A DNA stretch of 64,000 nt, taken from IMG/VR virus record IMGVR_UViG_3300032931_001151, positions 150,201 through 214,200 of that record; one strand, written 5' to 3'. The notes under the pieces were generated by a model, which saw only the letters and a list, made by a program, of their open reading frames with translations, was not told the DNA's origin and made no database searches. A program made the translations under genes and the position numbers. Within the stretch, counting starts at the first letter, position 1; each line of letters starts with the position of its first letter. This document shows positions 3,561 through 63,885 of the stretch, piece by piece.

Positions 3561-4052
3561 CTATTTTACATTATTTATAGTAATCGTTCCATAATGACCG
3601 ATACAAATTGAATCGGCTTTTCCGTCGTGTGGAACTTTACATCTTGCCGATTTTAATAAGTTCATAGTCGGGTATGTATCTTTTACGAAATCTATTGCTC
3701 CACTTTTCTCGTCGTGTATGTATTTTTCACCCAATACATTCTTTTTCCATTTTTGTGGAGATATTTCCTTATATTCTATCCCAAGACACTCACATACCCC
3801 CTTAACCACTCCAACTCCTTCTCCGAAATTCCAAATGGACGTTCTTCCCTGGCCGGCAAATGCATGAACATGTTCCAAGTATACTAATTCAACTTTATTG
3901 GTTTTTAGATAATTAGATAGTTCTTTACCGTTTATTTTATTTTTTCCGTTTTCCTTTTCTTCTATTGGCATAATGATACAATCAATAAGATTTGTATCAT
4001 TAAAGATAGAAATTCCACCACTAAAACCAGGATCAATCCCGCATATAATCAT
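3561..4052 (-). CDS. RuvC-like Holliday junction resolvase
   Basis: ICGIDPGFSGGI; YLEHV; FGEGVG; ISPQKWKK; DGKADSICI catalytic motifs. Confidence 0.85.
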   Translation of the reverse strand: MIICGIDPGFSGGISIFNDTNLIDCIIMPIEEKENGKNKINGKELSNYLKTNKVELVYLEHVHAFAGQGRTSIWNFGEGVGVVKGVCECLGIEYKEISPQKWKKNVLGEKYIHDEKSGAIDFVKDTYPTMNLLKSARCKVPHDGKADSICIGHYGTITINNVK

Positions 4053-58072: not shown

Positions 58073-58150
58073 GGGCAAAAGTCTAGCTGGTATGCTAGTA
58101 AACGTCTGATAAGCGTTTTTAGGTGAGTTCGATTCTCACTTTGCCCACCA
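58073..58150 (+). tRNA. tRNA-Ile(GAT)
   Basis: GGGCAAA/TTTGCCC; CT-GAT-AA; TTCGATT; CCA. Confidence 0.85.
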
Positions 58151-58218
58151 TTCCCTTTAATAGAGTTGGAGTTGAAACTATTTTAGCTGAGGTTAAGCTA
58201 ATTAAAACCTCAAGTCAT

Positions 58219-58294
58219 CAGGCCGTAGTGTTTAACAGTAGCATGGCTCGTTTGGGGCGAGGTGGAGGGAGTGCAAATCTCCCCGGCTTGACCA
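58219..58294 (+). tRNA. tRNA-Pro(TGG)
   Basis: CAGGCCG/CGGCTTG; TT-TGG-GG; CCA. Confidence 0.85.
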
Positions 58295-58309
58295 TTTTTA
58301 GTAATTCAT

Positions 58310-58383
58310 ACCGATGTAGCATAAGTAGCAAATGCGAAAGATTGTCGATCTTTAGATAGTGGGTGCAAGTCCCATCATCGGTG
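58310..58383 (+). tRNA. tRNA-Asp(GTC), CCA not encoded
   Basis: ACCGATG/CATCGGT; AAAGA-TTGTCGA-TCTTT. Confidence 0.85.
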
Positions 58384-58444
58384 CTTTTATTAACAATAGA
58401 ATTAATATATGATATAATGTACTTTCACTATTAGAAAGGATTAT

Positions 58445-58714
58445 ATGAAAGATTCAAAATATGGCATATTTCAAGAATATATAAGATGCTATAGAGATAT
58501 ACTCATTTATATAAAAAAGTATGAACATGATAGCGATGAAATCACTAAGGATAGATTTGAAAGTAAAAGGTTAAAATTAATAGATATGGAAGAAAACGAA
58601 TCGTTTATTGTTAATATTCTATCTATATTAGAAATGCCTAGCACACAAGATATTTGTATTACGAGTAGTTTCCCAAGTAATATTTTGAAATGCACTACAT
58701 ATAATAAAAATTAA
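58445..58714 (+). CDS. Hypothetical protein in the tRNA array
   Basis: AAAGGA SD. Confidence 0.55.
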   Translation: MKDSKYGIFQEYIRCYRDILIYIKKYEHDSDEITKDRFESKRLKLIDMEENESFIVNILSILEMPSTQDICITSSFPSNILKCTTYNKN

Positions 58715-58730
58715 TTTATATAGAATTTAT

Positions 58731-58805
58731 GCCGGGGTCGTATATGAGGTAATACGCAAGTCTGAAGAACTTGATCAACGGATTCGAGCGCCGTCCCCGG
58801 CACCA
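58731..58805 (+). tRNA. tRNA-Phe(GAA)
   Basis: GCCGGGG/CCCCGGC; CT-GAA-GA; CCA. Confidence 0.85.
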
Positions 58806-58850
58806 TTTACATAGGGTTACAACTCCCATAGTTAAAAGTTGAAACTTTGT

Positions 58851-58927
58851 GGGTTGCAAGCATAAATGGAAGGATGCCATCGATTCTTAATCGATAGAGT
58901 AGGGTTCGAATCCCTAGCGACCCACCA
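58851..58927 (+). tRNA. tRNA-Lys(CTT)
   Basis: GGGTTGC/GCGACCC; TT-CTT-AA; TTCGAAT; CCA. Confidence 0.9.
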
Positions 58928-58930
58928 CAT

Positions 58931-59019
58931 GGATTAGGCAATTGCAGGAGATGCAACATTGTTTGGAAAACAATTGGGGCCTTTACGGGCCTTTGGAGCG
59001 TAACCAAGCTAATCCGCCA
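58931..59019 (+). tRNA. tRNA-Ser(GGA), atypical D- and T-arms
   Basis: GGATTAG/CTAATCC; ATTGT-TTGGAAA-ACAAT; long variable arm; G73; CCA. Confidence 0.75.
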
Positions 59020-59024
59020 TTTTT

Positions 59025-59114
59025 GGAAATACGGGAACATAGTTGTTCAAATAGTTTCGAAAACTATCCTTGGTCTTAATTGGCCTAACCGTGCGATTCG
59101 GTGTATTTCCTCCA
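59025..59114 (+). tRNA. tRNA-Ser(CGA), 8/4 acceptor/T-stem fold
   Basis: GGAAATAC/GTATTTCC 8 bp; ACCG/CGGT T-stem; TT-CGA-AA; CCA. Confidence 0.75.
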
Positions 59115-59148
59115 ACTTCGTGATATAATAAATAGTACGAGAGGCAAT

Positions 59149-59937
59149 ATGAATATAACAATTGATCACGATAACGATGGTTTTGGCGCACAAATGATGG
59201 GTATTATATCTGCTATAGCATATGCAAAATTTCATGAACATACTTATTATCACACACCAAGAAAAAATATAAAATTGGTTGGGATAGAAGAACCTCAGAA
59301 TGCGGAGATTGATAAAATTAATGAGTTTTTAAACACATTTATGAAAAATTTGGGAATAAATTTAATGCCATCTGAAATTTTACTTGACGGAGAGGGTAAA
59401 CCAAAATTTACATGTGAAGTTAGGCCACATTTTCATGACGAAATATATTACAACGGATCAAACTATTATACGAAAGAATTTAATACATATCTAAGACAAA
59501 ATTATCCACTTACTAAACCTAACTATTATGAAAATATGCATAATATAGCAATTCACATTAGAAGGGGATCTGATATAGATTCACCATCGCAACGGCATAA
59601 TAGATGGATTGATTCAAACGTTTATAATTGTCTTATAGACTTAATACACGTAAAATATCCAAATAGTATTATACATGTATTTTCTTGGGGTGATCCAGAA
59701 ATAGAGATAAAACCGTTCATAGTATTTCATTCATCAAATAGTGGTTCAACATTTTTAGATGACTATAATGCATTAGTTTGGGCCGACATATTGGTAGTGG
59801 GGTCAAGTACTTTTAGTCTTTCTGCCGCTCTTATAAACAATAATAAAATAATAATTGATGGGGCATTTTATAAATTAAATGGTATGTACATACCAAATGA
59901 ATGGATGCAAAATTTTAAAGAATTTTATGTAATGTGA
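59149..59937 (+). CDS. GT11-like (alpha-1,2-fucosyl/colitosyl-transferase-like) glycosyltransferase
   Basis: DGFGAQ; IAIHIRRGSD; ADIL..G.STFS; true start after the tRNA-Ser(CGA). Confidence 0.75.
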   Translation: MNITIDHDNDGFGAQMMGIISAIAYAKFHEHTYYHTPRKNIKLVGIEEPQNAEIDKINEFLNTFMKNLGINLMPSEILLDGEGKPKFTCEVRPHFHDEIYYNGSNYYTKEFNTYLRQNYPLTKPNYYENMHNIAIHIRRGSDIDSPSQRHNRWIDSNVYNCLIDLIHVKYPNSIIHVFSWGDPEIEIKPFIVFHSSNSGSTFLDDYNALVWADILVVGSSTFSLSAALINNNKIIIDGAFYKLNGMYIPNEWMQNFKEFYVM

Positions 59938-59986
59938 AATATTATAGAATAAAGAATTATTCTAAAGATTATGAAAAAATTAAAAT

Positions 59987-60078
59987 GGATCGGTGAGTGA
60001 GCGGTCAAAACTAGAAATTTACTAAATTTCCGATCCCAGAAATGGGGTCCGTAGGTTCGAATCCTACCCGATCCGCCA
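59987..60078 (+). tRNA. tRNA-Ser(ACT)
   Basis: GGATCGG/CCGATCC; GAAAT-TTACTAA-ATTTC; long variable arm; G73; CCA. Confidence 0.85.
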
Positions 60079-60081
60079 TAT

Positions 60082-60174
60082 GGAGAGAACAACCGAGAAT
60101 AGTTTTCGGCACTGATTTGAAATCAGAGGGTTCCGTGCAAACGGGATAAGGTGCGATACCTTGGCTCTCCACCA
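60082..60174 (+). tRNA. tRNA-Ser(TGA), extended D-stem
   Basis: GGAGAG/CTCTCC; CTGA-TTTGAAA-TCAG; long variable arm; CCA. Confidence 0.75.
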
Positions 60175-60176
60175 TC

Positions 60177-60204
60177 TTGACAATATATTAAAATATGCTA
60201 TAAT
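60177..60204 (+). promoter_or_regulatory. Sigma70 promoter with extended -10 directly upstream of the suppressor tRNA
   Basis: TTGACA-16 nt-TATAAT with TG extension. Confidence 0.75.
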
Positions 60205-60214
60205 GAACTCACAT

Positions 60215-60286
60215 GGGTCATTGACCGAGTGGCACAGGTGATGGGTTCTAAACCCATTTAGAAGTGTTCAAATCACTTATGACTCA
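60215..60286 (+). tRNA. Amber suppressor tRNA (anticodon CTA)
   Basis: GGGTCAT/ATGACTC; ATGGG-TT-CTA-AA-CCCAT; AAGTG-TTCAAAT-CACTT; A73; followed by CAA, not CCA. Confidence 0.8.
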
Positions 60287-60319
60287 CAATTATAAATAAA
60301 CACTAGCAAAGGAGCTAAT

Positions 60320-60430
60320 ATGATTGCTTAGAAGAAATTAGAATATGGGTAGGTAGGTTGTCGTGGACCTCCTATTTGTTATTGGTTGAATAATCTCAAA
60401 TTAACACCAATAACAAGGAATATAATATGA
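60320..60430 (+). promoter_or_regulatory. Leader ORF with two in-frame UAG codons, coupled to the downstream gene
   Basis: AAAGGAG SD; MIA*KKLEYG*VGCRGPPICYWLNNLKLTPITRNII-TGA; TGA overlaps ATG 60427; hairpin 60376-60416 abuts and covers the downstream SD. Confidence 0.7.
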
Positions 60431-60855
60431 ATAAAAAAGAATTGATTGCTAAGATTAAAGAAGAAATTAAAGTCACTTCCGAGATCCTTAGAATAAATAA
60501 AAAGACTCACAAACAAAACCAAAGAATGTATTCACAAGGCACAAGACCTTTTGAGTTAATTCAACTTTATCCGTTTGATGTGGAAAAGGTAACACCTTTT
60601 AATCATAATTATGTAAAAGTAATTGATGGAAAACATTATTGGAACTATAGTTACAACGAAACTCCATGCAATGCGGGCATTGAGTCGGCAAAGTGCCACT
60701 TGACTTGTCTACATATTGTGTATAATATGCTTCGTACAAAAAAGACGCATTGCCACAACATTGAAAGGAATGATTATTATGTTAAATATTTTGATAAGCT
60801 CATACAAGGATATCTTAGCCAAGTGGAAGAGGAACAAAATGTTGTCGTATCCTGA
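60427..60855 (+). CDS. Hypothetical protein preceding the PTH2-like gene
   Basis: AAGGA SD; LHIVYNMLR motif. Confidence 0.65.
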   Translation: MNKKELIAKIKEEIKVTSEILRINKKTHKQNQRMYSQGTRPFELIQLYPFDVEKVTPFNHNYVKVIDGKHYWNYSYNETPCNAGIESAKCHLTCLHIVYNMLRTKKTHCHNIERNDYYVKYFDKLIQGYLSQVEEEQNVVVS

Positions 60856-61210
60856 ACCACCATCTTTAGAAGAAGCACTAAAACAAGTTAGAATGTATGT
60901 TTTAGTAAGAAGGGAAATTTTACCTTTAGTCCATTGTGTTTGTCAATGTACACATGCGGTAGCCGAATTTATTCATTATCATCAAAATGATAATACTAAA
61001 TTATGGGTTACATGTGAAAAAACTTTAATTGTTTTAGAAGCGACGGAAGACCAAATAAAAGAAAAAATGATTTGGTTTGCTGACCGTCATATGAATTATC
61101 AACCTTTTTGTGAACCGGATATGAATAATGTTCTAACGGCGGTTGCGTTTCAACCAATTACAAAACAAATTGGTAATGAAGTTTTTGGTAACTTAAAGCT
61201 TCTAAAATAA
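60839..61210 (+). CDS. Peptidyl-tRNA hydrolase, PTH2-like phage family
   Basis: YVLVRR; Q..HAVAEF; W.....LIVL; F.EPDM...LTAVA. Confidence 0.7.
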   Translation: MLSYPEPPSLEEALKQVRMYVLVRREILPLVHCVCQCTHAVAEFIHYHQNDNTKLWVTCEKTLIVLEATEDQIKEKMIWFADRHMNYQPFCEPDMNNVLTAVAFQPITKQIGNEVFGNLKLLK

Positions 61211-61223
61211 TATTTAAAAATGA

Positions 61224-61262
61224 CCCGTCCAAGTATAAATAAGTTTATAACACTTGGACGGG
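61224..61262 (+). promoter_or_regulatory. 11-bp hairpin enclosing a late promoter and sequestering the SD of the endonuclease gene
   Basis: CCCGTCCAAGT...ACTTGGACGGG; TATAAATA 61234-61241; ATG 61271. Confidence 0.8.
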
Positions 61263-61270
61263 ACACTATT

Positions 61271-61897
61271 ATGAATGAAAATGTACTTAGAAAAGATAAA
61301 CAAAAATTACATCTTATTAAAAAATTAAGATGTATTATGGATCATGGCGGAAAATGTAAACATTGTGGAAAGGATTTAATAATAAACCACTACGATGCAG
61401 ATTTTCATCATATAGACCCTTCGATTAAAGAAGTTGTGGGGCATTCTTTAATGAATGGGCATTATTACAAAATAAAAAAAGAAGTTGATAAGTGTATTTT
61501 ATTATGTGGATCGTGTCATAGGTATGAACATTGTAAATGGAAAGATTGGATTAATCACAAAGAAGAATTACTTTCTTTAGCAAAAAATATTCATAATAGG
61601 AGAACCATAGAAGATACACAACAACGTATTAAAAAAATTAAAGAATTATATTTAAGCGGTAATGGTATAAGACAAATAGCAAAAATATTAGGAATACCTG
61701 TATCCTCTGTTGGATATACAATTAAGAAATTGGGTATAGGTAGACCATTTATTACTAAAGTGTCTAATGAAGAATTGATAGAATGTTTTAAGCAAGGAAT
61801 GACAGCAAGTGAGGTTTCAAAAAAATATAATTGTTGTTATGCAAACTGTTGTAGAAAACATAAAAAATGGAGAAATAAAAAAAGTAAGCTGCTATAG
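61271..61897 (+). CDS. HNH-type homing endonuclease with C-terminal HTH domains
   Basis: CKHCG; DFHHID; CILLCGSCHRYEH; GIRQIAKILG. Confidence 0.8.
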   Translation: MNENVLRKDKQKLHLIKKLRCIMDHGGKCKHCGKDLIINHYDADFHHIDPSIKEVVGHSLMNGHYYKIKKEVDKCILLCGSCHRYEHCKWKDWINHKEELLSLAKNIHNRRTIEDTQQRIKKIKELYLSGNGIRQIAKILGIPVSSVGYTIKKLGIGRPFITKVSNEELIECFKQGMTASEVSKKYNCCYANCCRKHKKWRNKKSKLL

Positions 61898-61961
61898 TAT
61901 AATGGTATTATGCGATCTTGGTATGATTGAGACGGAAGTTCGATTCTTCCTGGCAGCACCA
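61888..61961 (+). tRNA. tRNA-Thr(GGT)
   Basis: GCTGCTA/TGGCAGC; TT-GGT-AT; CCA; overlaps the endonuclease stop. Confidence 0.85.
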
Positions 61962-62027
61962 TTCAAGTTACACTTTTTTCTAAGAGTTTTGTGTTTCCAA
62001 GCAAGCAAACGAAAAAACTTAGTGCAT

Positions 62028-62101
62028 ACAGTAATAGTATAACGGAATTATTTTCCACTCCAAACGGAAAGATCGTGGTCCGACTCCACGTTACTGTGCC
62101 A
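62028..62101 (+). tRNA. tRNA-Trp(CCA)
   Basis: ACAGTAA/TTACTGT; CT-CCA-AA; CCA end. Confidence 0.75.
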
Positions 62102-62106
62102 ATCAT

Positions 62107-62182
62107 ATCCGTTTAGCTCATTAGGAAGAGTTTCTTGGTCCTAACAAGAAGGTAGTAGGTTCGAATCCTACAACGGATGCCA
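62107..62182 (+). tRNA. tRNA-Arg(CCT)
   Basis: ATCCGTT/AACGGAT; GT-CCT-AA; CCA. Confidence 0.85.
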
Positions 62183-62193
62183 AAATTTAGTAT

Positions 62194-62267
62194 ACCCGGT
62201 TCATCTAATGGAAGGATATAAAACTACGAATTTTATCATTTAGGTTCGAATCCTAAGCCGGGTGCCA
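62194..62267 (+). tRNA. tRNA-Arg(ACG)
   Basis: ACCCGGT/GCCGGGT; CT-ACG-AA; CCA. Confidence 0.9.
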
Positions 62268-62270
62268 TTT

Positions 62271-62393
62271 CTCTAGATGCATTAAAGGATTACACCAAAC
62301 AGTGGATTGTAGGTTCAACTCCTACCAAGTGAAAGCTTGTAGCTTAATTGGCAAAGCAACCGTCAAAAACATCTTTTAAACTTTTTGCTAGAG
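62271..62393 (+). ncRNA. Circularly permuted tRNA-like RNA (T-arm, loop-closed acceptor stem, D-arm); Y-RNA/YrlA-like architecture
   Basis: GTAGG-TTCAACT-CCTAC; CAAGT-GAAA-GCTTG; TA-GCTT-AATTGGCA-AAGC. Confidence 0.65.
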
Positions 62394-62405
62394 AATCTTT
62401 TTCAT

Positions 62406-62495
62406 GCGGATGTGTTGGAATTGGCAGACATCATAGTTTTAGACACTATGGCGAAATTAAGTAGCGTGCAGGTTCAACTCCTGTCGTCCGCACCA
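62406..62495 (+). tRNA. tRNA-Leu(TAG)
   Basis: GCGGATG/CGTCCGC; TT-TAG-AC; long variable arm; CCA. Confidence 0.9.
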
Positions 62496-62499
62496 AATT

Positions 62500-62636
62500 G
62501 TTGTCGTGTAGCTCAGTGGTTAGAGCGAATTTTTGAGGAAACGAGAAATTGTTTCTAGGTCGCAAATAGTGACCGTTCAAAATTGTGCGGGTAAAAATGT
62601 CTTTAGTGACATGGTTCGATTCCCCCTACGACAACA
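62500..62636 (+). ncRNA. tRNA-like RNA with a branched insert replacing the anticodon loop
   Basis: GTTGTCGT/ACGACAAC; canonical D-arm GCTCAGTGGTTAGAGC; TTCGATT T-loop; no 7-nt anticodon loop. Confidence 0.6.
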
Positions 62637-62646
62637 TCTTTTTCAA

Positions 62647-62732
62647 GCGTCTATGGAGAAATAGAAGACTCGTGAGACTAAGAATCTCATTCCGTAAATG
62701 GAGTACAAGTGCAAGTCTTGTTAGGCGCACCA
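62647..62732 (+). tRNA. tRNA-Leu(AAG)
   Basis: GCGTCTA/TAGGCGC; TGAGA-CTAAGAA-TCTCA; CCA. Confidence 0.85.
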
Positions 62733-62747
62733 TTTTGTAAAATCCAC

Positions 62748-62835
62748 GGGGGCGTGGTGAAATAGAAAACACACAACGCTTAAAACGTTGCGGATAGAAA
62801 TATCCTTGCAGGTGCAAGTCCTGTCGCCCCTACCA
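62748..62835 (+). tRNA. tRNA-Leu(TAA)
   Basis: GGGGGCG/CGCCCCT; CT-TAA-AA; CCA. Confidence 0.9.
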
Positions 62836-62840
62836 ATTAC

Positions 62841-62914
62841 GCCGATTTAGTATAGTGACATTACAATTGATTCGTATCCAATAAACGATGGTTTAATTCC
62901 ATCAATCGGCACCA
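62841..62914 (+). tRNA. tRNA-Thr(CGT)
   Basis: GCCGATT/AATCGGC; TT-CGT-AT; T-loop TTTAATT; CCA. Confidence 0.75.
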
Positions 62915-62915
62915 G

Positions 62916-63344
62916 TTATTCGTGAAATAGTTTCTTTACTTTATTCGTAAGTTCAACATTTTCTACTAATTTAGGAATGACCATTCCAAATTCTCTACCT
63001 TTAGTTTTAATATAAGGAAATGCAATCATAAGAATATCGAGTAACTCTCTATATTTTCTAAAGTTTTCTATAAATTGTTTTTTATCTTTTATCTCTTTTA
63101 TGTTGTTTAAATTGGACAATAAAGAAATAAAACAAACTAAATCATCGTTATTCTTAAAGTGATCTAATGATATATTGGTAGAGTTGGTTAAATCGTCGTC
63201 AATTTGTGATTTTGAGGGTACTAATGGTTCTATTTTTTTAGGAGTTGGTCTTGACTTCCATTTATCAAAAAAACCTTCAATTAATTGTAAATCTTCTGTT
63301 AAACTTGATAAATCTTCATTTAATTCTTGTTGTTCTAATGGCAT
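62916..63344 (-). CDS. Late hypothetical protein (MPLEQQELNE...)
   Basis: AGGGGAG SD; TATAAATA 63364-63371 (-). Confidence 0.65.
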   Translation of the reverse strand: MPLEQQELNEDLSSLTEDLQLIEGFFDKWKSRPTPKKIEPLVPSKSQIDDDLTNSTNISLDHFKNNDDLVCFISLLSNLNNIKEIKDKKQFIENFRKYRELLDILMIAFPYIKTKGREFGMVIPKLVENVELTNKVKKLFHE

Positions 63345-63408
63345 AATGACTCCCCTATTGACATATTTATAATGAGGACTATAATAAATATAAGAAAAGG
63401 GGTATAAA

Positions 63409-63639
63409 ATGAGTACTCTAGAACTCTTAAATAATGAAGACCTAGATTGCCTAGATGGTATGCTCATCTTTGGCATGAATGGGGATATTAATCGGTATAA
63501 CGTGTGTAAACTTAAGGTTGATGAATATTTAGTGGAAGAAGCCATTAAGGAATATGGATTAAAAGATGCTTTAAAAGAAAAAGTAATTACCCAAAAAGAG
63601 GCTAACGAGTATCTTGAAAAGCATAAGTTTGTTGCATAA
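63409..63639 (+). CDS. Hypothetical protein
   Basis: AAGGGG SD. Confidence 0.55.
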   Translation: MSTLELLNNEDLDCLDGMLIFGMNGDINRYNVCKLKVDEYLVEEAIKEYGLKDALKEKVITQKEANEYLEKHKFVA

Positions 63640-63640
63640 T

Positions 63641-63714
63641 GGGCGTTTAGTTTAATGGAAAAACATCTCTTTTACACGGAGAATTCGGGGGTTCGATTCC
63701 CTCAATGCCTACCA
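63641..63714 (+). tRNA. tRNA-Val(TAC)
   Basis: GGGCGTT/AATGCCT; TT-TAC-AC; CCA. Confidence 0.9.
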
Positions 63715-63718
63715 ATAT

Positions 63719-63804
63719 GCGGAGTGAAGTCCAATGGCCGGACATCAGATTGTGGCTCTGAGTGCGAAAGCACATTGCGGGTTCGAATCCCGTCACTTCG
63801 CCCA
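63719..63804 (+). tRNA. tRNA-His(GTG) with long variable arm
   Basis: G-1:C73; TCAGA-TTGTGGC-TCTGA; GTGC-GAAA-GCAC extra arm; CCA. Confidence 0.85.
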
Positions 63805-63809
63805 TTTAC

Positions 63810-63885
63810 GGTGGATTAGTTATTCGGCAATAACAGTAGTATCATAAACTACACAAAAAGGGTTCGACTCCCTTATCCACTACCA
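63810..63885 (+). tRNA. tRNA-Met or Ile2 (CAT)
   Basis: GGTGGAT/ATCCACT; AT-CAT-AA; CCA. Confidence 0.8.

What the first reader, a model, noticed from the sequence alone, without database searches (positions are those of the whole stretch)
62271..62393. Circularly permuted tRNA mimic with a GNRA-capped acceptor stem
Seen: a T-arm (62309-25) comes first, then an acceptor-like stem closed by a GAAA tetraloop (62326-39), then U8-A9 and a canonical D-arm with GG (62340-57). The flanks can pair (CTCTAG/CTAGAG, or AGATG/CATCT). It cannot be aminoacylated. Established: bacterial and phage YrlA Y RNAs have a tRNA-like domain with a loop-closed acceptor stem and bind Ro60/Rsr. Inference: a Y-like RNA or a tRNA-elbow decoy for nucleases or sensors.
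Basis: partly seen in the sequence, partly recalled or inferred. Interest (0 to 1): 0.7.

Follow-up and report, generated by a model that had tools for sequence, protein, structure and literature searches.

The report
Phage Y-RNA-like tRNA mimic, no Ro60
Between two tRNA genes of a large freshwater phage lies a small RNA gene that folds like a tRNA with its amino-acid-accepting end sealed by a hairpin, built like the bacterial YrlA "Y RNAs"; relatives keep the fold through matching changes, but no gene for the usual Ro60 partner protein was found in the phage record.

Summary
Window 62268-62397 (+) holds a T arm, a 5-bp stem closed by GAAA, U8-A9 and a canonical D arm. Two helices that pair the flanks enclose them.

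Rfam's YrlA model matches end to end (35.4 bits, below the cut-off of 69). Phage copies next to Ro60 (TROVE) genes also stay below it (43-56 bits). Tandem tRNAs reach 26 bits, so the score alone proves little.

The stronger evidence is a natural variant (L067; also in metagenome runs X1 and X11). It sits in a near-identical tRNA array, yet its core is rebuilt:
- Compensatory changes occur in the T stem, the D stem, the hairpin's closing pair and the tertiary 15-48 pair.
- The hairpin is 10 bp with a GCAA loop instead of 5 bp with GAAA.

I read the element as a functional YrlA-type tRNA mimic released by processing of the tRNA array. It departs from YrlA in three ways:
- No TROVE or RtcB gene is in the 214-kb record, although the array abuts the record end.
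- The GNCGAA motif is absent; the stem instead resembles Y RNAs beside a Ro60 gene in one other phage (L062).
- The tRNA-like head is a hypervariable island.

Ro60 binding and any decoy role are untested. Verdict: new variant of a known kind.

The parts
62194..62267 (+). Upstream tRNA-Arg(ACG) with encoded CCA. The element starts 1-2 nt after it.
   Evidence: ARAGORN, Rfam tRNA 47.6 bits. In runs X4 and X5 a different tRNA precedes the element, with the junction at 62264-62265.
62268..62405 (+). Inter-tRNA segment. This is the RNA that would be released when the flanking tRNAs are matured (inferred).
   Evidence: Sequence. No strong + strand promoter or terminator lies inside the sub-array 61888-62914. 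No transcript data are available.
62269..62276 (+). Helix 1, 5' strand (UUCUCUAG). It pairs with 62388-62395.
   Evidence: MFE, RNAalifold, YrlA model alignment. 62392 A>G in X2, X3 and X4 turns the U-A pair into U-G.
62277..62281 (+). 5' side of the internal loop (AUGCA). AUGC matches the YrlA consensus.
   Evidence: alignment.
62282..62290 (+). Helix 2, 5' strand (UUAAAGGAU). It pairs with 62371-62379.
   Evidence: This block is 15/19 identical to the Y-RNA units beside a TROVE gene in L062.
62290..62293 (+). UUAC, the YUAY motif of YrlA RNAs.
   Evidence: Sequence. Motif as defined in PMC4201824.
62294..62308 (+). Variable-region-like linker. It contains positions 46 (62306) and 48 (62308).
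   Evidence: 62295 is polymorphic: C>T, or a 2-nt deletion. Positions 46 and 48 co-vary with 13-22 and 15.
62309..62325 (+). T arm: 5-bp stem and loop UUCAACU.
   Evidence: Pair 62311-62323 is A-U in the window and G-C in L067.
62326..62339 (+). Acceptor-like hairpin: 5 bp closed by GAAA (62331-62334).
   Evidence: L067, X1 and X11 have 10 bp plus GCAA, and the closing pair changes from C-G to U-A. X12 has a different stem, again with GAAA.
62340..62341 (+). U8-A9 equivalent.
   Evidence: Invariant in L067.
62342..62357 (+). D arm: 4-bp stem and loop AAUUGGCA, with A14, A15, G18, G19 and A21.
   Evidence: Pair 62345-62354 changes from U-A to C-G. Position 15 (62347) changes A>G together with position 48 (62308) U>C.
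62358..62370 (+). 3' linker between the D arm and helix 2.
   Evidence: Invariant in L067.
62371..62379 (+). Helix 2, 3' strand.
62380..62387 (+). 3' side of the internal loop (ACUUUUUG). The terminal UUG matches the YrlA consensus.
62388..62395 (+). Helix 1, 3' strand (CUAGAGAA).
   Evidence: An X3 contig that lacks the element joins another tRNA directly to 62394.
62406..62495 (+). Downstream tRNA-Leu(UAG). RNase P cleavage at its 5' end would set the element's 3' boundary (inferred).
   Evidence: ARAGORN, Rfam tRNA 41.1 bits.

Best explanation
The element is a functional, phage-encoded small RNA of the YrlA (bacterial Y RNA) type.

Anatomy (shown):
- A long stem formed by its two ends: helix 1, a 5 x 8 nt internal loop, helix 2, then UUAC.
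- On that stem sits an L-shaped tRNA-like head: T arm, D arm, U8-A14, G18/G19 with the T loop, and the 15-48 pair.
- The acceptor end of the head is sealed by a GNRA-capped hairpin. The RNA has no free acceptor end and no anticodon loop, so it cannot be aminoacylated as transcribed or decode.

Biogenesis (inferred):
- It is transcribed with the tRNA sub-array 61888-62914.
- It is freed when the 3' end of tRNA-Arg(ACG) and the 5' end of tRNA-Leu(UAG) are matured.

Action (inferred):
- The conserved stem is the docking module for a Ro60/Rsr-type protein supplied in trans, either by the host or by an unassembled part of the phage.
- The tRNA-like head is the effector end. It engages tRNA-recognising factors. 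It is exchanged as a hypervariable cassette among otherwise near-identical phage genomes.
For: 1. Family match.
- The Rfam YrlA model matches over positions 1-114 with the same geometry: a 6-bp helix, a 5 x 8 internal loop and a 7-bp helix. AUGC, UUG and YUAY are conserved.
- The score is 35.4 bits for the window copy and 41.3 bits for the L067 copy.
- Phage copies that sit 0.2-1 kb upstream of TROVE genes score only 43.5-56.1 bits.

2. Conservation of the fold.
- Window and L067 keep all 40 pairs.
- Both sides change at T-stem pair 51-63, D-stem pair 13-22, the hairpin's closing pair and the Levitt pair 15-48. Slid controls show no such change.
- A46>G46 accompanies the 13-22 change.
- The hairpin length differs (5 vs 10 bp) but both loops are GNRA.
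- X11 adds a U-A to U-G change in the T stem. X12 shows a third hairpin allele with GAAA.
- RNAalifold and MFE folding recover the same architecture. The L067 copy gives z -3.45.

3. The element behaves as a discrete module.
- Contigs that carry a different upstream tRNA, or that lack the element, break at 62264-62265 and 62394, which are the ends of helix 1.

4. The stem resembles Ro60-linked Y RNAs.
- AGAUGC-AUUAAAGGA-UUAC is 15/19 identical to the block that opens two YrlB-like units beside a TROVE gene in phage contig L062, and a related form opens its two YrlA-like units.

5. Selection on the head.
- Over 1.77 kb the two genomes differ by 0-1.5 per 100 nt, and by 1 difference in the 678-nt HNH ORF.
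- In the element core they differ by 44 per 100 nt, yet the structure is kept.

6. Context.
- The phage also carries an Rnl1-type RNA ligase, a CCA-adding-family enzyme and PTH2.
Against: - No TROVE/Ro60 or RtcB gene is found in the 214-kb record. In TROVE-positive phages the gene lies within about 1 kb downstream. Here the next 1.6 kb holds only tRNAs and one unrelated minus-strand ORF.
- The strict GNCGAAN0-1G motif proposed for Rsr recognition (PMC4201824) is absent. The aligned residues are UCUAGAUG, and only the loop half (A-U-G) matches.
- The score is below Rfam's gathering cut-off. The model also gives up to 25.8 bits on tandem tRNAs.
- Covariation rests on few independent alleles. The core differences were probably introduced by recombination rather than stepwise mutation.
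- There is no transcript evidence, and the host is unknown.
- Searches for the stem motif in viral and bacterial collections found only chance hits.
Confidence: 0.55

Rival explanations
1. Ro60-independent tRNA-elbow mimic. The RNA acts on its own as a decoy or sponge for factors that recognise the tRNA body, such as host anticodon or other tRNA-targeting defence nucleases, tRNA-sensing regulators or tRNA-modifying enzymes. The long stem serves only to hold and stabilise the head.
For: - No TROVE gene is in the record.
- At least four complete TROVE-less phage genomes also carry capped T-hairpin-D elements: G004/L007, G021/L032, G025/L037 and G033/L052.
- The GNCGAA motif is absent.
- The head is the hypervariable part and the stem is invariant, a pattern expected at a conflict interface.
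- The phage carries an Rnl1-type ligase, as T4 does for repair of nuclease-cut tRNA.
- Hughes et al. proposed that the YrlA tRNA-like domain could competitively inhibit an anticodon nuclease (PMC7790460).
Against: - The stem keeps the YrlA helix and loop geometry and conserved loop letters.
- It closely resembles Y RNAs beside a TROVE gene in L062, including units that have no tRNA-like head. A mere scaffold has no need for that.
- An RNA without an anticodon loop cannot compete at the active site of an anticodon nuclease.
- No target is known.
Confidence: 0.25
2. Processing or punctuation element. The structured tRNA-like spacer helps RNase P, RNase Z or RNase E cut the polycistronic tRNA precursor. 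It has no function of its own after release.
For: - It lies inside a tightly packed tRNA array with 2-nt and 11-nt spacers.
Against: - Neighbouring tRNAs in this array are separated by 5-12 nt without any such element.
- Relatives exist in which tRNA-Leu is joined directly to another tRNA without it.
- Punctuation does not require the tertiary 15-48 and 13-22-46 co-variation or the YrlA-type stem.
Confidence: 0.08
3. Non-functional relic. It is the 3' part of one tRNA fused to the 5' part of the next after a deletion or tandem duplication, and the YrlA model picks it up only because that model resembles a tRNA dimer.
For: Tandem tRNAs give YrlA hits of 16.7 bits in this window and up to 25.8 bits in T4. 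YrlA RNAs probably arose from tRNAs (PMC4201824).
Against: - Every stem substitution between the alleles is compensated, including a tertiary pair.
- The hairpin is rebuilt at a different length with a GNRA loop each time.
- The flanks form two helices with YrlA geometry.
- The module's boundaries coincide with the helix ends.
Confidence: 0.05
4. Genuine circularly permuted tRNA gene, or permuted two-piece tmRNA gene, matured into an aminoacylatable RNA.
For: The gene order is 3' half then 5' half, as in permuted tRNA genes of Cyanidioschyzon merolae and in two-piece tmRNA genes (my own knowledge).
Against: - There is no anticodon loop or anticodon. The 'anticodon side' is an open 17-bp bipartite stem.
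- The halves are joined by only 4 nt on a 5-bp stem (10 bp in L067), with no discriminator or CCA.
- There is no tag reading frame, and ARAGORN finds no tmRNA.
- No RtcB gene was found in the record; no BHB-type splicing endonuclease was looked for.
Confidence: 0.01

Closest known systems
YrlA RNAs (Rfam RF02553; Chen et al. 2014, PMC4201824), including the copies encoded next to Ro60 in mycobacteriophages and other phages
   Same: - The order is stem, YUAY, variable region, T arm, loop-closed acceptor-like stem, U8-A9, D arm, stem.
- The tRNA tertiary pairs are present, with A15:U48 / G15:C48 co-variation.
- The internal loop is 5 x 8 nt between a 6-bp and a 7-bp helix.
- The loop letters AUGC and UUG are conserved.
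   Different: - It is not next to a Ro60/TROVE gene, and none is in the record.
- GNCGAAN0-1G is replaced by UCUAGAUG.
- It is embedded in a tRNA array rather than an rsr operon.
- It scores below the Rfam cut-off (35 vs 69 bits).
- The head is hypervariable between near-identical genomes.
Y-RNA cluster upstream of the TROVE gene in IMG/VR contig 3300012344_000011 (L062)
   Same: - They share the 5' block GAUG(G/C)-AU(U/A)AAAGG-UUAC, helix 2 and a U-rich 3' loop.
- Two of its four units also carry a capped T-hairpin-D head.
   Different: - That cluster sits about 100 nt upstream of a TROVE ORF.
- Its heads differ in sequence.
- Two of its units lack a head altogether, which makes them YrlB-like.
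Phage T4 stable RNAs rnaC and rnaD (species 1 and 2) in the T4 tRNA cluster
   Same: - They are small stable RNAs of unknown function encoded inside the tRNA cluster of a T4-type phage, next to a homing endonuclease gene (segB there, an HNH ORF here).
- rnaC has a T-arm-like 3' region.
   Different: - They have no permuted order, no capped acceptor hairpin and no D arm.
- They give no YrlA model hit.
Circularly permuted tRNA genes (Cyanidioschyzon merolae) and permuted two-piece tmRNA genes
   Same: The 3' half (T arm plus 3' acceptor strand) lies upstream of the 5' half (5' acceptor strand plus D arm).
   Different: - Those are processed to RNAs with a free CCA end and, for the tRNAs, an anticodon loop.
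- Here the acceptor end is sealed by a tetraloop and the anticodon side is an open stem.

Membership tests
YrlA / bacterial Y RNA (RF02553) | T stem-loop and D stem-loop with the tRNA-invariant residues | tested here: met
   T loop UUCAACU (UUCGAAU in L067). D loop with A14, G18, G19 and A21. U8-A9 present.
YrlA / bacterial Y RNA (RF02553) | Loop-closed 'acceptor' stem (AS) between the T and D arms | tested here: met
   5 bp plus GAAA at 62326-62339. 10 bp plus GCAA in L067.
YrlA / bacterial Y RNA (RF02553) | tRNA tertiary pairs can form, and the Levitt pair 15-48 co-varies | tested here: met
   A15:U48 in the window, G15:C48 in L067. U8-A14, G18-U55 and G19-C56 are invariant.
YrlA / bacterial Y RNA (RF02553) | 5' and 3' ends pair into a long stem with an internal loop | tested here: met
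   Helix 1 (8 bp), a 5 x 8 loop and helix 2 (9 bp), by MFE, RNAalifold and the covariance model.
YrlA / bacterial Y RNA (RF02553) | Conserved YUAY at the start of the variable region | tested here: met
   UUAC at 62290-62293 (motif).
YrlA / bacterial Y RNA (RF02553) | GNCGAAN0-1G motif near the 5' end (proposed Rsr contact) | tested here: not met
   The aligned residues are UCUAGAUG. Only the loop half (A-U-G) matches. Several TROVE-linked phage copies also deviate, and L062 has GUGAUGG.
YrlA / bacterial Y RNA (RF02553) | Encoded within about 4 kb of a Ro60/TROVE gene on the same strand | tested here: not met
   No TROVE match in the 214-kb record at E<=0.01. Caveat: the array runs to the record end, 1.6 kb downstream, and the record is estimated 90% complete.
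YrlA / bacterial Y RNA (RF02553) | Score at or above Rfam's gathering cut-off (69 bits) | tested here: not met
   35.4 bits for the window, 41.3 for L067. None of 44 phage records reaches 69, and TROVE-linked copies score 43.5-56.1.
YrlA / bacterial Y RNA (RF02553) | Bound by Ro60/Rsr in vivo | not testable with these tools
   Needs immunoprecipitation or a gel-shift assay. The host is unknown.
Canonical tRNA | Cloverleaf with a free acceptor end and an anticodon arm | tested here: not met
   No ARAGORN or Rfam tRNA hit on 62268-62405, even at E<=10.
Circularly permuted tRNA gene | 3' half upstream of 5' half, a complete anticodon arm formed by the termini, and an excisable intervening sequence that leaves a 7-bp acceptor stem | tested here: not met
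   Only the order of the halves fits. There is no anticodon loop, and a 4-nt loop sits on a 5-bp (or 10-bp) stem.
Two-piece (permuted) tmRNA | tRNA-like domain plus a tag reading frame | tested here: not met
   ARAGORN reports no tmRNA. The downstream sequence runs straight into tRNA-Leu.

The most novel reading that the evidence does not exclude
The capped tRNA-like head works without Ro60. It is a hypervariable, recombining cassette with which T4-like phages counter host factors that recognise or cut tRNAs. Together with the neighbouring branched tRNA-like RNA (62500-62640), and with the 'orphan' capped heads in other complete TROVE-less phage genomes, it would define a class of phage tRNA-mimic counter-defence RNAs carried in tRNA arrays.
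Probability: 0.18. Interest if true: 0.85.

Novelty: new variant of a known kind. Interest (0 to 1): 0.55.

Why it matters
- YrlA-type Y RNAs have been catalogued by their position next to Ro60 genes (Chen et al. 2014, PMC4201824). The role of their tRNA-like domain is still open.
- This copy sits in the tRNA array of a T4-like phage, with no Ro60 gene in the record. Its Ro60-type stem is invariant while its tRNA-like head is swapped between otherwise identical genomes.
- That separation of the two modules gives a natural experiment on what the head does.
- It also suggests that annotation limited to tRNA finders and Rfam cut-offs misses functional tRNA mimics in phage tRNA arrays.
- If the head proves to be a decoy, it would add an RNA-based layer to the phage-host conflict over tRNA integrity.

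Tried and rejected
- Close relatives by neighbouring proteins. The PTH2 ORF, the HNH ORF and the DNA polymerase were used against IMG/VR. The result was none, none, and one 15-kb fragment.
- blastn of the array against GenBank phages found only a tRNA-sized match.
- The DNA polymerase is only about 30% identical to cyanophage gp43, so no host could be inferred.
- The exact 5'-flank pattern gave 0 hits in IMG/VR and 1 in JGI metagenomes (L067).
- Stem-motif scans.
  - One pattern was mistyped, with one base too many. It gave 5 coding hits.
  - The corrected pattern gave only L062 plus 13 coding chance hits.
  - The motif plus T loop against 185,579 species genomes gave one ordinary tRNA in a Bacteroidota MAG that lacks TROVE. 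No bacterial Y RNA with this stem, and so no host clue, was found.
- RNA evidence. No RNA run holding the stretch was listed. Both read-laying runs therefore went to DNA contigs. Run X8 laid nothing.
- T4 rnaC and rnaD are not YrlA-like.
- No donor for the L067-type T or D arm exists among this genome's own tRNAs, so ectopic conversion from an in-genome tRNA is unlikely.
- The Annual Review on bacterial Ro60 (PMC10870794) is not held.
- Readings considered and rejected: permuted tRNA, two-piece tmRNA, and an attP or tRNA-fragment relic. See the rival explanations.

Full report
**Setting**

The window is the last 64 kb of a 214.2-kb IMG/VR virus record with 32.8% G+C. Its replication genes mark it as a distant T4-like phage: a family-B DNA polymerase about 30% identical to cyanophage gp43, the topoisomerase II large subunit, a gp46-like SbcC and a DnaB-type helicase. 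DNA runs that hold it come from lake water, freshwater sediment and microbial mats.

All 18 tRNA genes of the record lie on the + strand at window 58073-63885, and the array runs to within 115 nt of the record end. The finding sits in the 138-nt gap between tRNA-Arg(ACG), which ends in an encoded CCA at 62267, and tRNA-Leu(UAG), which starts at 62406.

**Checking the observation**

- T arm at 62309-62325.
- A 5-bp stem closed by GAAA at 62326-62339.
- U8-A9 at 62340-41.
- A D arm at 62342-62357 with A14, G18, G19 and A21.

The flanks pair as two helices, 62269-76 with 62388-95 and 62282-90 with 62371-79. A 5-nt by 8-nt internal loop separates them. ARAGORN and the Rfam tRNA model see no tRNA here, even at E<=10.

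**Family match and its limits**

Rfam's YrlA model (RF02553) aligns over all 114 positions at 62270-62397. The score is 35.4 bits, E 3e-6 in a 406-nt search and 4e-7 for the genome. The alignment reproduces the model's geometry: a 6-bp helix, a 5 x 8 loop and a 7-bp helix. The conserved letters AUGC, UUG and YUAY (here UUAC) are present.

The score is below the cut-off of 69. Two controls put that in context:
- The model gives 'full-length' hits of 25.8 and 19.8 bits on true tandem tRNAs in phage T4, and 16.7 bits on a tRNA junction in this window. The score alone is therefore weak evidence.
- A generic pattern (T loop, 12-16 nt, start of the D arm) retrieved 63 IMG/VR loci, and 44 of the records were searched further. 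None reaches 69 bits.
  - 19 of the 44 encode a TROVE protein, typically 0.2-1 kb downstream on the same strand as the capped element.
  - Those Ro60-linked copies score only 43.5-56.1 bits.

Failing the Rfam cut-off therefore does not separate this element from bona fide phage Y RNAs.

**Structural conservation in relatives**

A JGI metagenome contig (L067, 1774 nt) carries the same array.
- Over 1.77 kb it differs from the window by 0-1.5 positions per 100 nt, and by one difference in the 678-nt HNH ORF.
- There are three exceptions. The core of the element (62306-62357) differs by 44 per 100 nt. The neighbouring odd tRNA-like RNA differs by 28 per 100 nt. The tRNA-Thr(CGT) is a different allele.

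Within the core, every stem substitution is compensated:
- T-stem pair 51-63 changes from A-U to G-C.
- D-stem pair 13-22 changes from U-A to C-G.
- The hairpin's closing pair changes from C-G to U-A.
- The tertiary Levitt pair changes from A15:U48 to G15:C48.

This 15-48 co-variation is the one Chen et al. reported among YrlA RNAs. Position 46 changes from A to G together with pair 13-22. That fits the 13-22-46 base triple known from yeast tRNA-Phe; this last point rests on my own knowledge.

The hairpin grows from 5 bp plus GAAA to 10 bp plus GCAA. All 40 pairs form in both copies. Four pairs change on both sides, against none when partners are slid by 1-3 columns. The L067 copy folds into the same architecture at -42.5 kcal/mol with z -3.45.

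Contigs from public runs add further alleles:
- X1 equals L067.
- X11 is L067-like, with a further U-A to U-G change in the T stem and a 2-nt deletion in the linker.
- X12 shows a third hairpin allele, again capped by GAAA, with a GCUC/GAGC D stem.
- X2, X3 and X4 change helix 1 only from U-A to U-G.

Contigs with a different upstream tRNA, or with no element at all, break at 62264-62265 and at 62394. The unit that comes and goes is exactly the structured RNA.

With so few alleles this is not a formal covariation statistic. A 44% divergent core in a 99.9% identical background must have come from recombination rather than stepwise mutation. Either way, only alleles that keep the L-shaped fold are seen.

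**Ro60 and the stem**

The record has no TROVE and no RtcB match. The 1.6 kb downstream holds only tRNAs and one unrelated minus-strand ORF. The record is estimated 90% complete and ends in the array, so a gene beyond the end cannot be excluded.

The strict GNCGAAN0-1G motif that Chen et al. linked to Rsr recognition is absent. The aligned residues are UCUAGAUG.

One TROVE-linked phage contig (L062) argues that the stem is still a Y-RNA stem.
- It has four Y-RNA units about 100 nt upstream of its TROVE ORF: two with a capped tRNA-like head and two without.
- Three of them open with GUGAUGG followed by a purine-rich helix-2 strand and UUAC; the fourth is a more diverged version that lacks UUAC. 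The headless units read GUGAUGG-AUAAAAGRC-UUAC, which is 15/19 identical to AGAUGC-AUUAAAGGA-UUAC here.
- The shared block is the part common to units with and without heads, which points to the protein-docking module.

Scans for this block elsewhere found only chance hits.

Conversely, at least four complete TROVE-less phage genomes carry capped T-hairpin-D elements: G004/L007, G021/L032, G025/L037 and G033/L052. Three of the four lie in or beside large tRNA arrays; L037 has a single predicted tRNA next to it. L007's element follows a CCA-UU junction just as this one does. 'Orphan' copies are therefore a recurring state and not an assembly accident.

**Most likely mechanism**

Shown: the RNA gene's anatomy, its conservation, its discreteness as a module, and its kinship with YrlA-type RNAs.

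Inferred:
- It is co-transcribed with the tRNA sub-array. No strong promoter or terminator lies inside 61888-62914.
- It is released by the enzymes that mature the flanking tRNAs.
- Its invariant stem docks a Ro60/Rsr-type protein supplied in trans.
- Its variable tRNA-like head engages tRNA-recognising factors.

The phage's Rnl1-type RNA ligase, CCA-adding-family enzyme and PTH2 show investment in tRNA maintenance. Hughes et al. proposed that the YrlA head could competitively inhibit an anticodon nuclease.

The main rival is that the RNA works without Ro60, as an elbow decoy or sponge. I cannot separate the two readings with the tools at hand. Relic, punctuation, permuted-tRNA and tmRNA readings are disfavoured by the anatomy and by the compensated changes.

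**Verdict**

This is a new variant of a known kind: a YrlA-type tRNA mimic that lies in a tRNA array, has no Ro60 gene in cis, lacks the canonical Ro60 motif, and has a hypervariable head. No RNA run holding the stretch was listed, so expression remains unproven.

Noticed in passing
window 62500-62640 (+): A second non-canonical tRNA-like RNA in the array. It has a 9-bp acceptor-type stem with free ends, a canonical D arm, a GGTTCGATTCC T loop on a weak T stem, and an 'anticodon arm' replaced by a long stem carrying two hairpins, followed by a long variable region. The tRNA model gives only 24 bits and ARAGORN is silent. Between the window and L067, 8 of 33 predicted pairs change on both sides, and the region differs by 28 per 100 nt in an otherwise identical background. 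It may be analogous to T4 rnaC/rnaD.
   Followed up: partly
window 61220-61897 (+): A 225-aa ORF with an HNH endonuclease domain plus a C-terminal HTH (phrog_3106 E 1.8e-13; Pfam HTH_28) sits directly upstream of the tRNA sub-array. It looks like a homing endonuclease, as segB does in the T4 tRNA cluster, and could drive the patchy allele exchange seen in the array.
   Followed up: partly
window 60215-60287 (+) and 59987-60078 (+): A tRNA with anticodon CTA (amber-suppressor type, labelled 'Pyl' by ARAGORN) sits right behind a perfect TTGACA-16-TATAAT promoter at 60177-60204. There is also a tRNA-Ser with anticodon ACT. The long ORFs read normally under code 11. The same two unusual tRNAs occur in the array of the complete 166-kb phage G004/L007.
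   Followed up: no
window 60716-61210 (+); G000:C1:60192-60824 (+); G000:C1:24369-24773 (-): A tRNA-maintenance set: a PTH2-type peptidyl-tRNA hydrolase inside the array, a T4 Rnl1-type RNA ligase (51 bits) and a CCA-adding / poly(A) polymerase family enzyme (81 bits) elsewhere in the genome. No Rnl2 and no RtcB.
   Followed up: partly
window 62841-62914 (+) vs L067 7-80 (-): The tRNA-Thr(CGT) that follows tRNA-Leu(TAA) is a very different allele in L067. There it resembles the window's tRNA-Thr(GGT) at 61888-61961. This gives a third divergent island and a 'goes back 945' joint in run X1.
   Followed up: no
L021 (around 3730-3880, +), L032 (minus strand, around 1040-1180) and L008 (around 2580-2720, +): Other phage contigs show chained or 'double-headed' tRNA-like arrangements. 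In L021 an outer acceptor stem ending in CCA and an inner capped head appear to share one long 'anticodon' helix. L032 and L008 show a D arm, a short linker, a T arm and a cap repeated in series. This was read by eye from the output and was not folded.
   Followed up: no
L052 (G033, no TROVE) vs L059 (G039, TROVE): Two complete phage genomes carry clearly similar capped elements in tRNA arrays, one with a TROVE gene and one without. This suggests loss or gain of the phage rsr gene while the RNA is kept.
   Followed up: no
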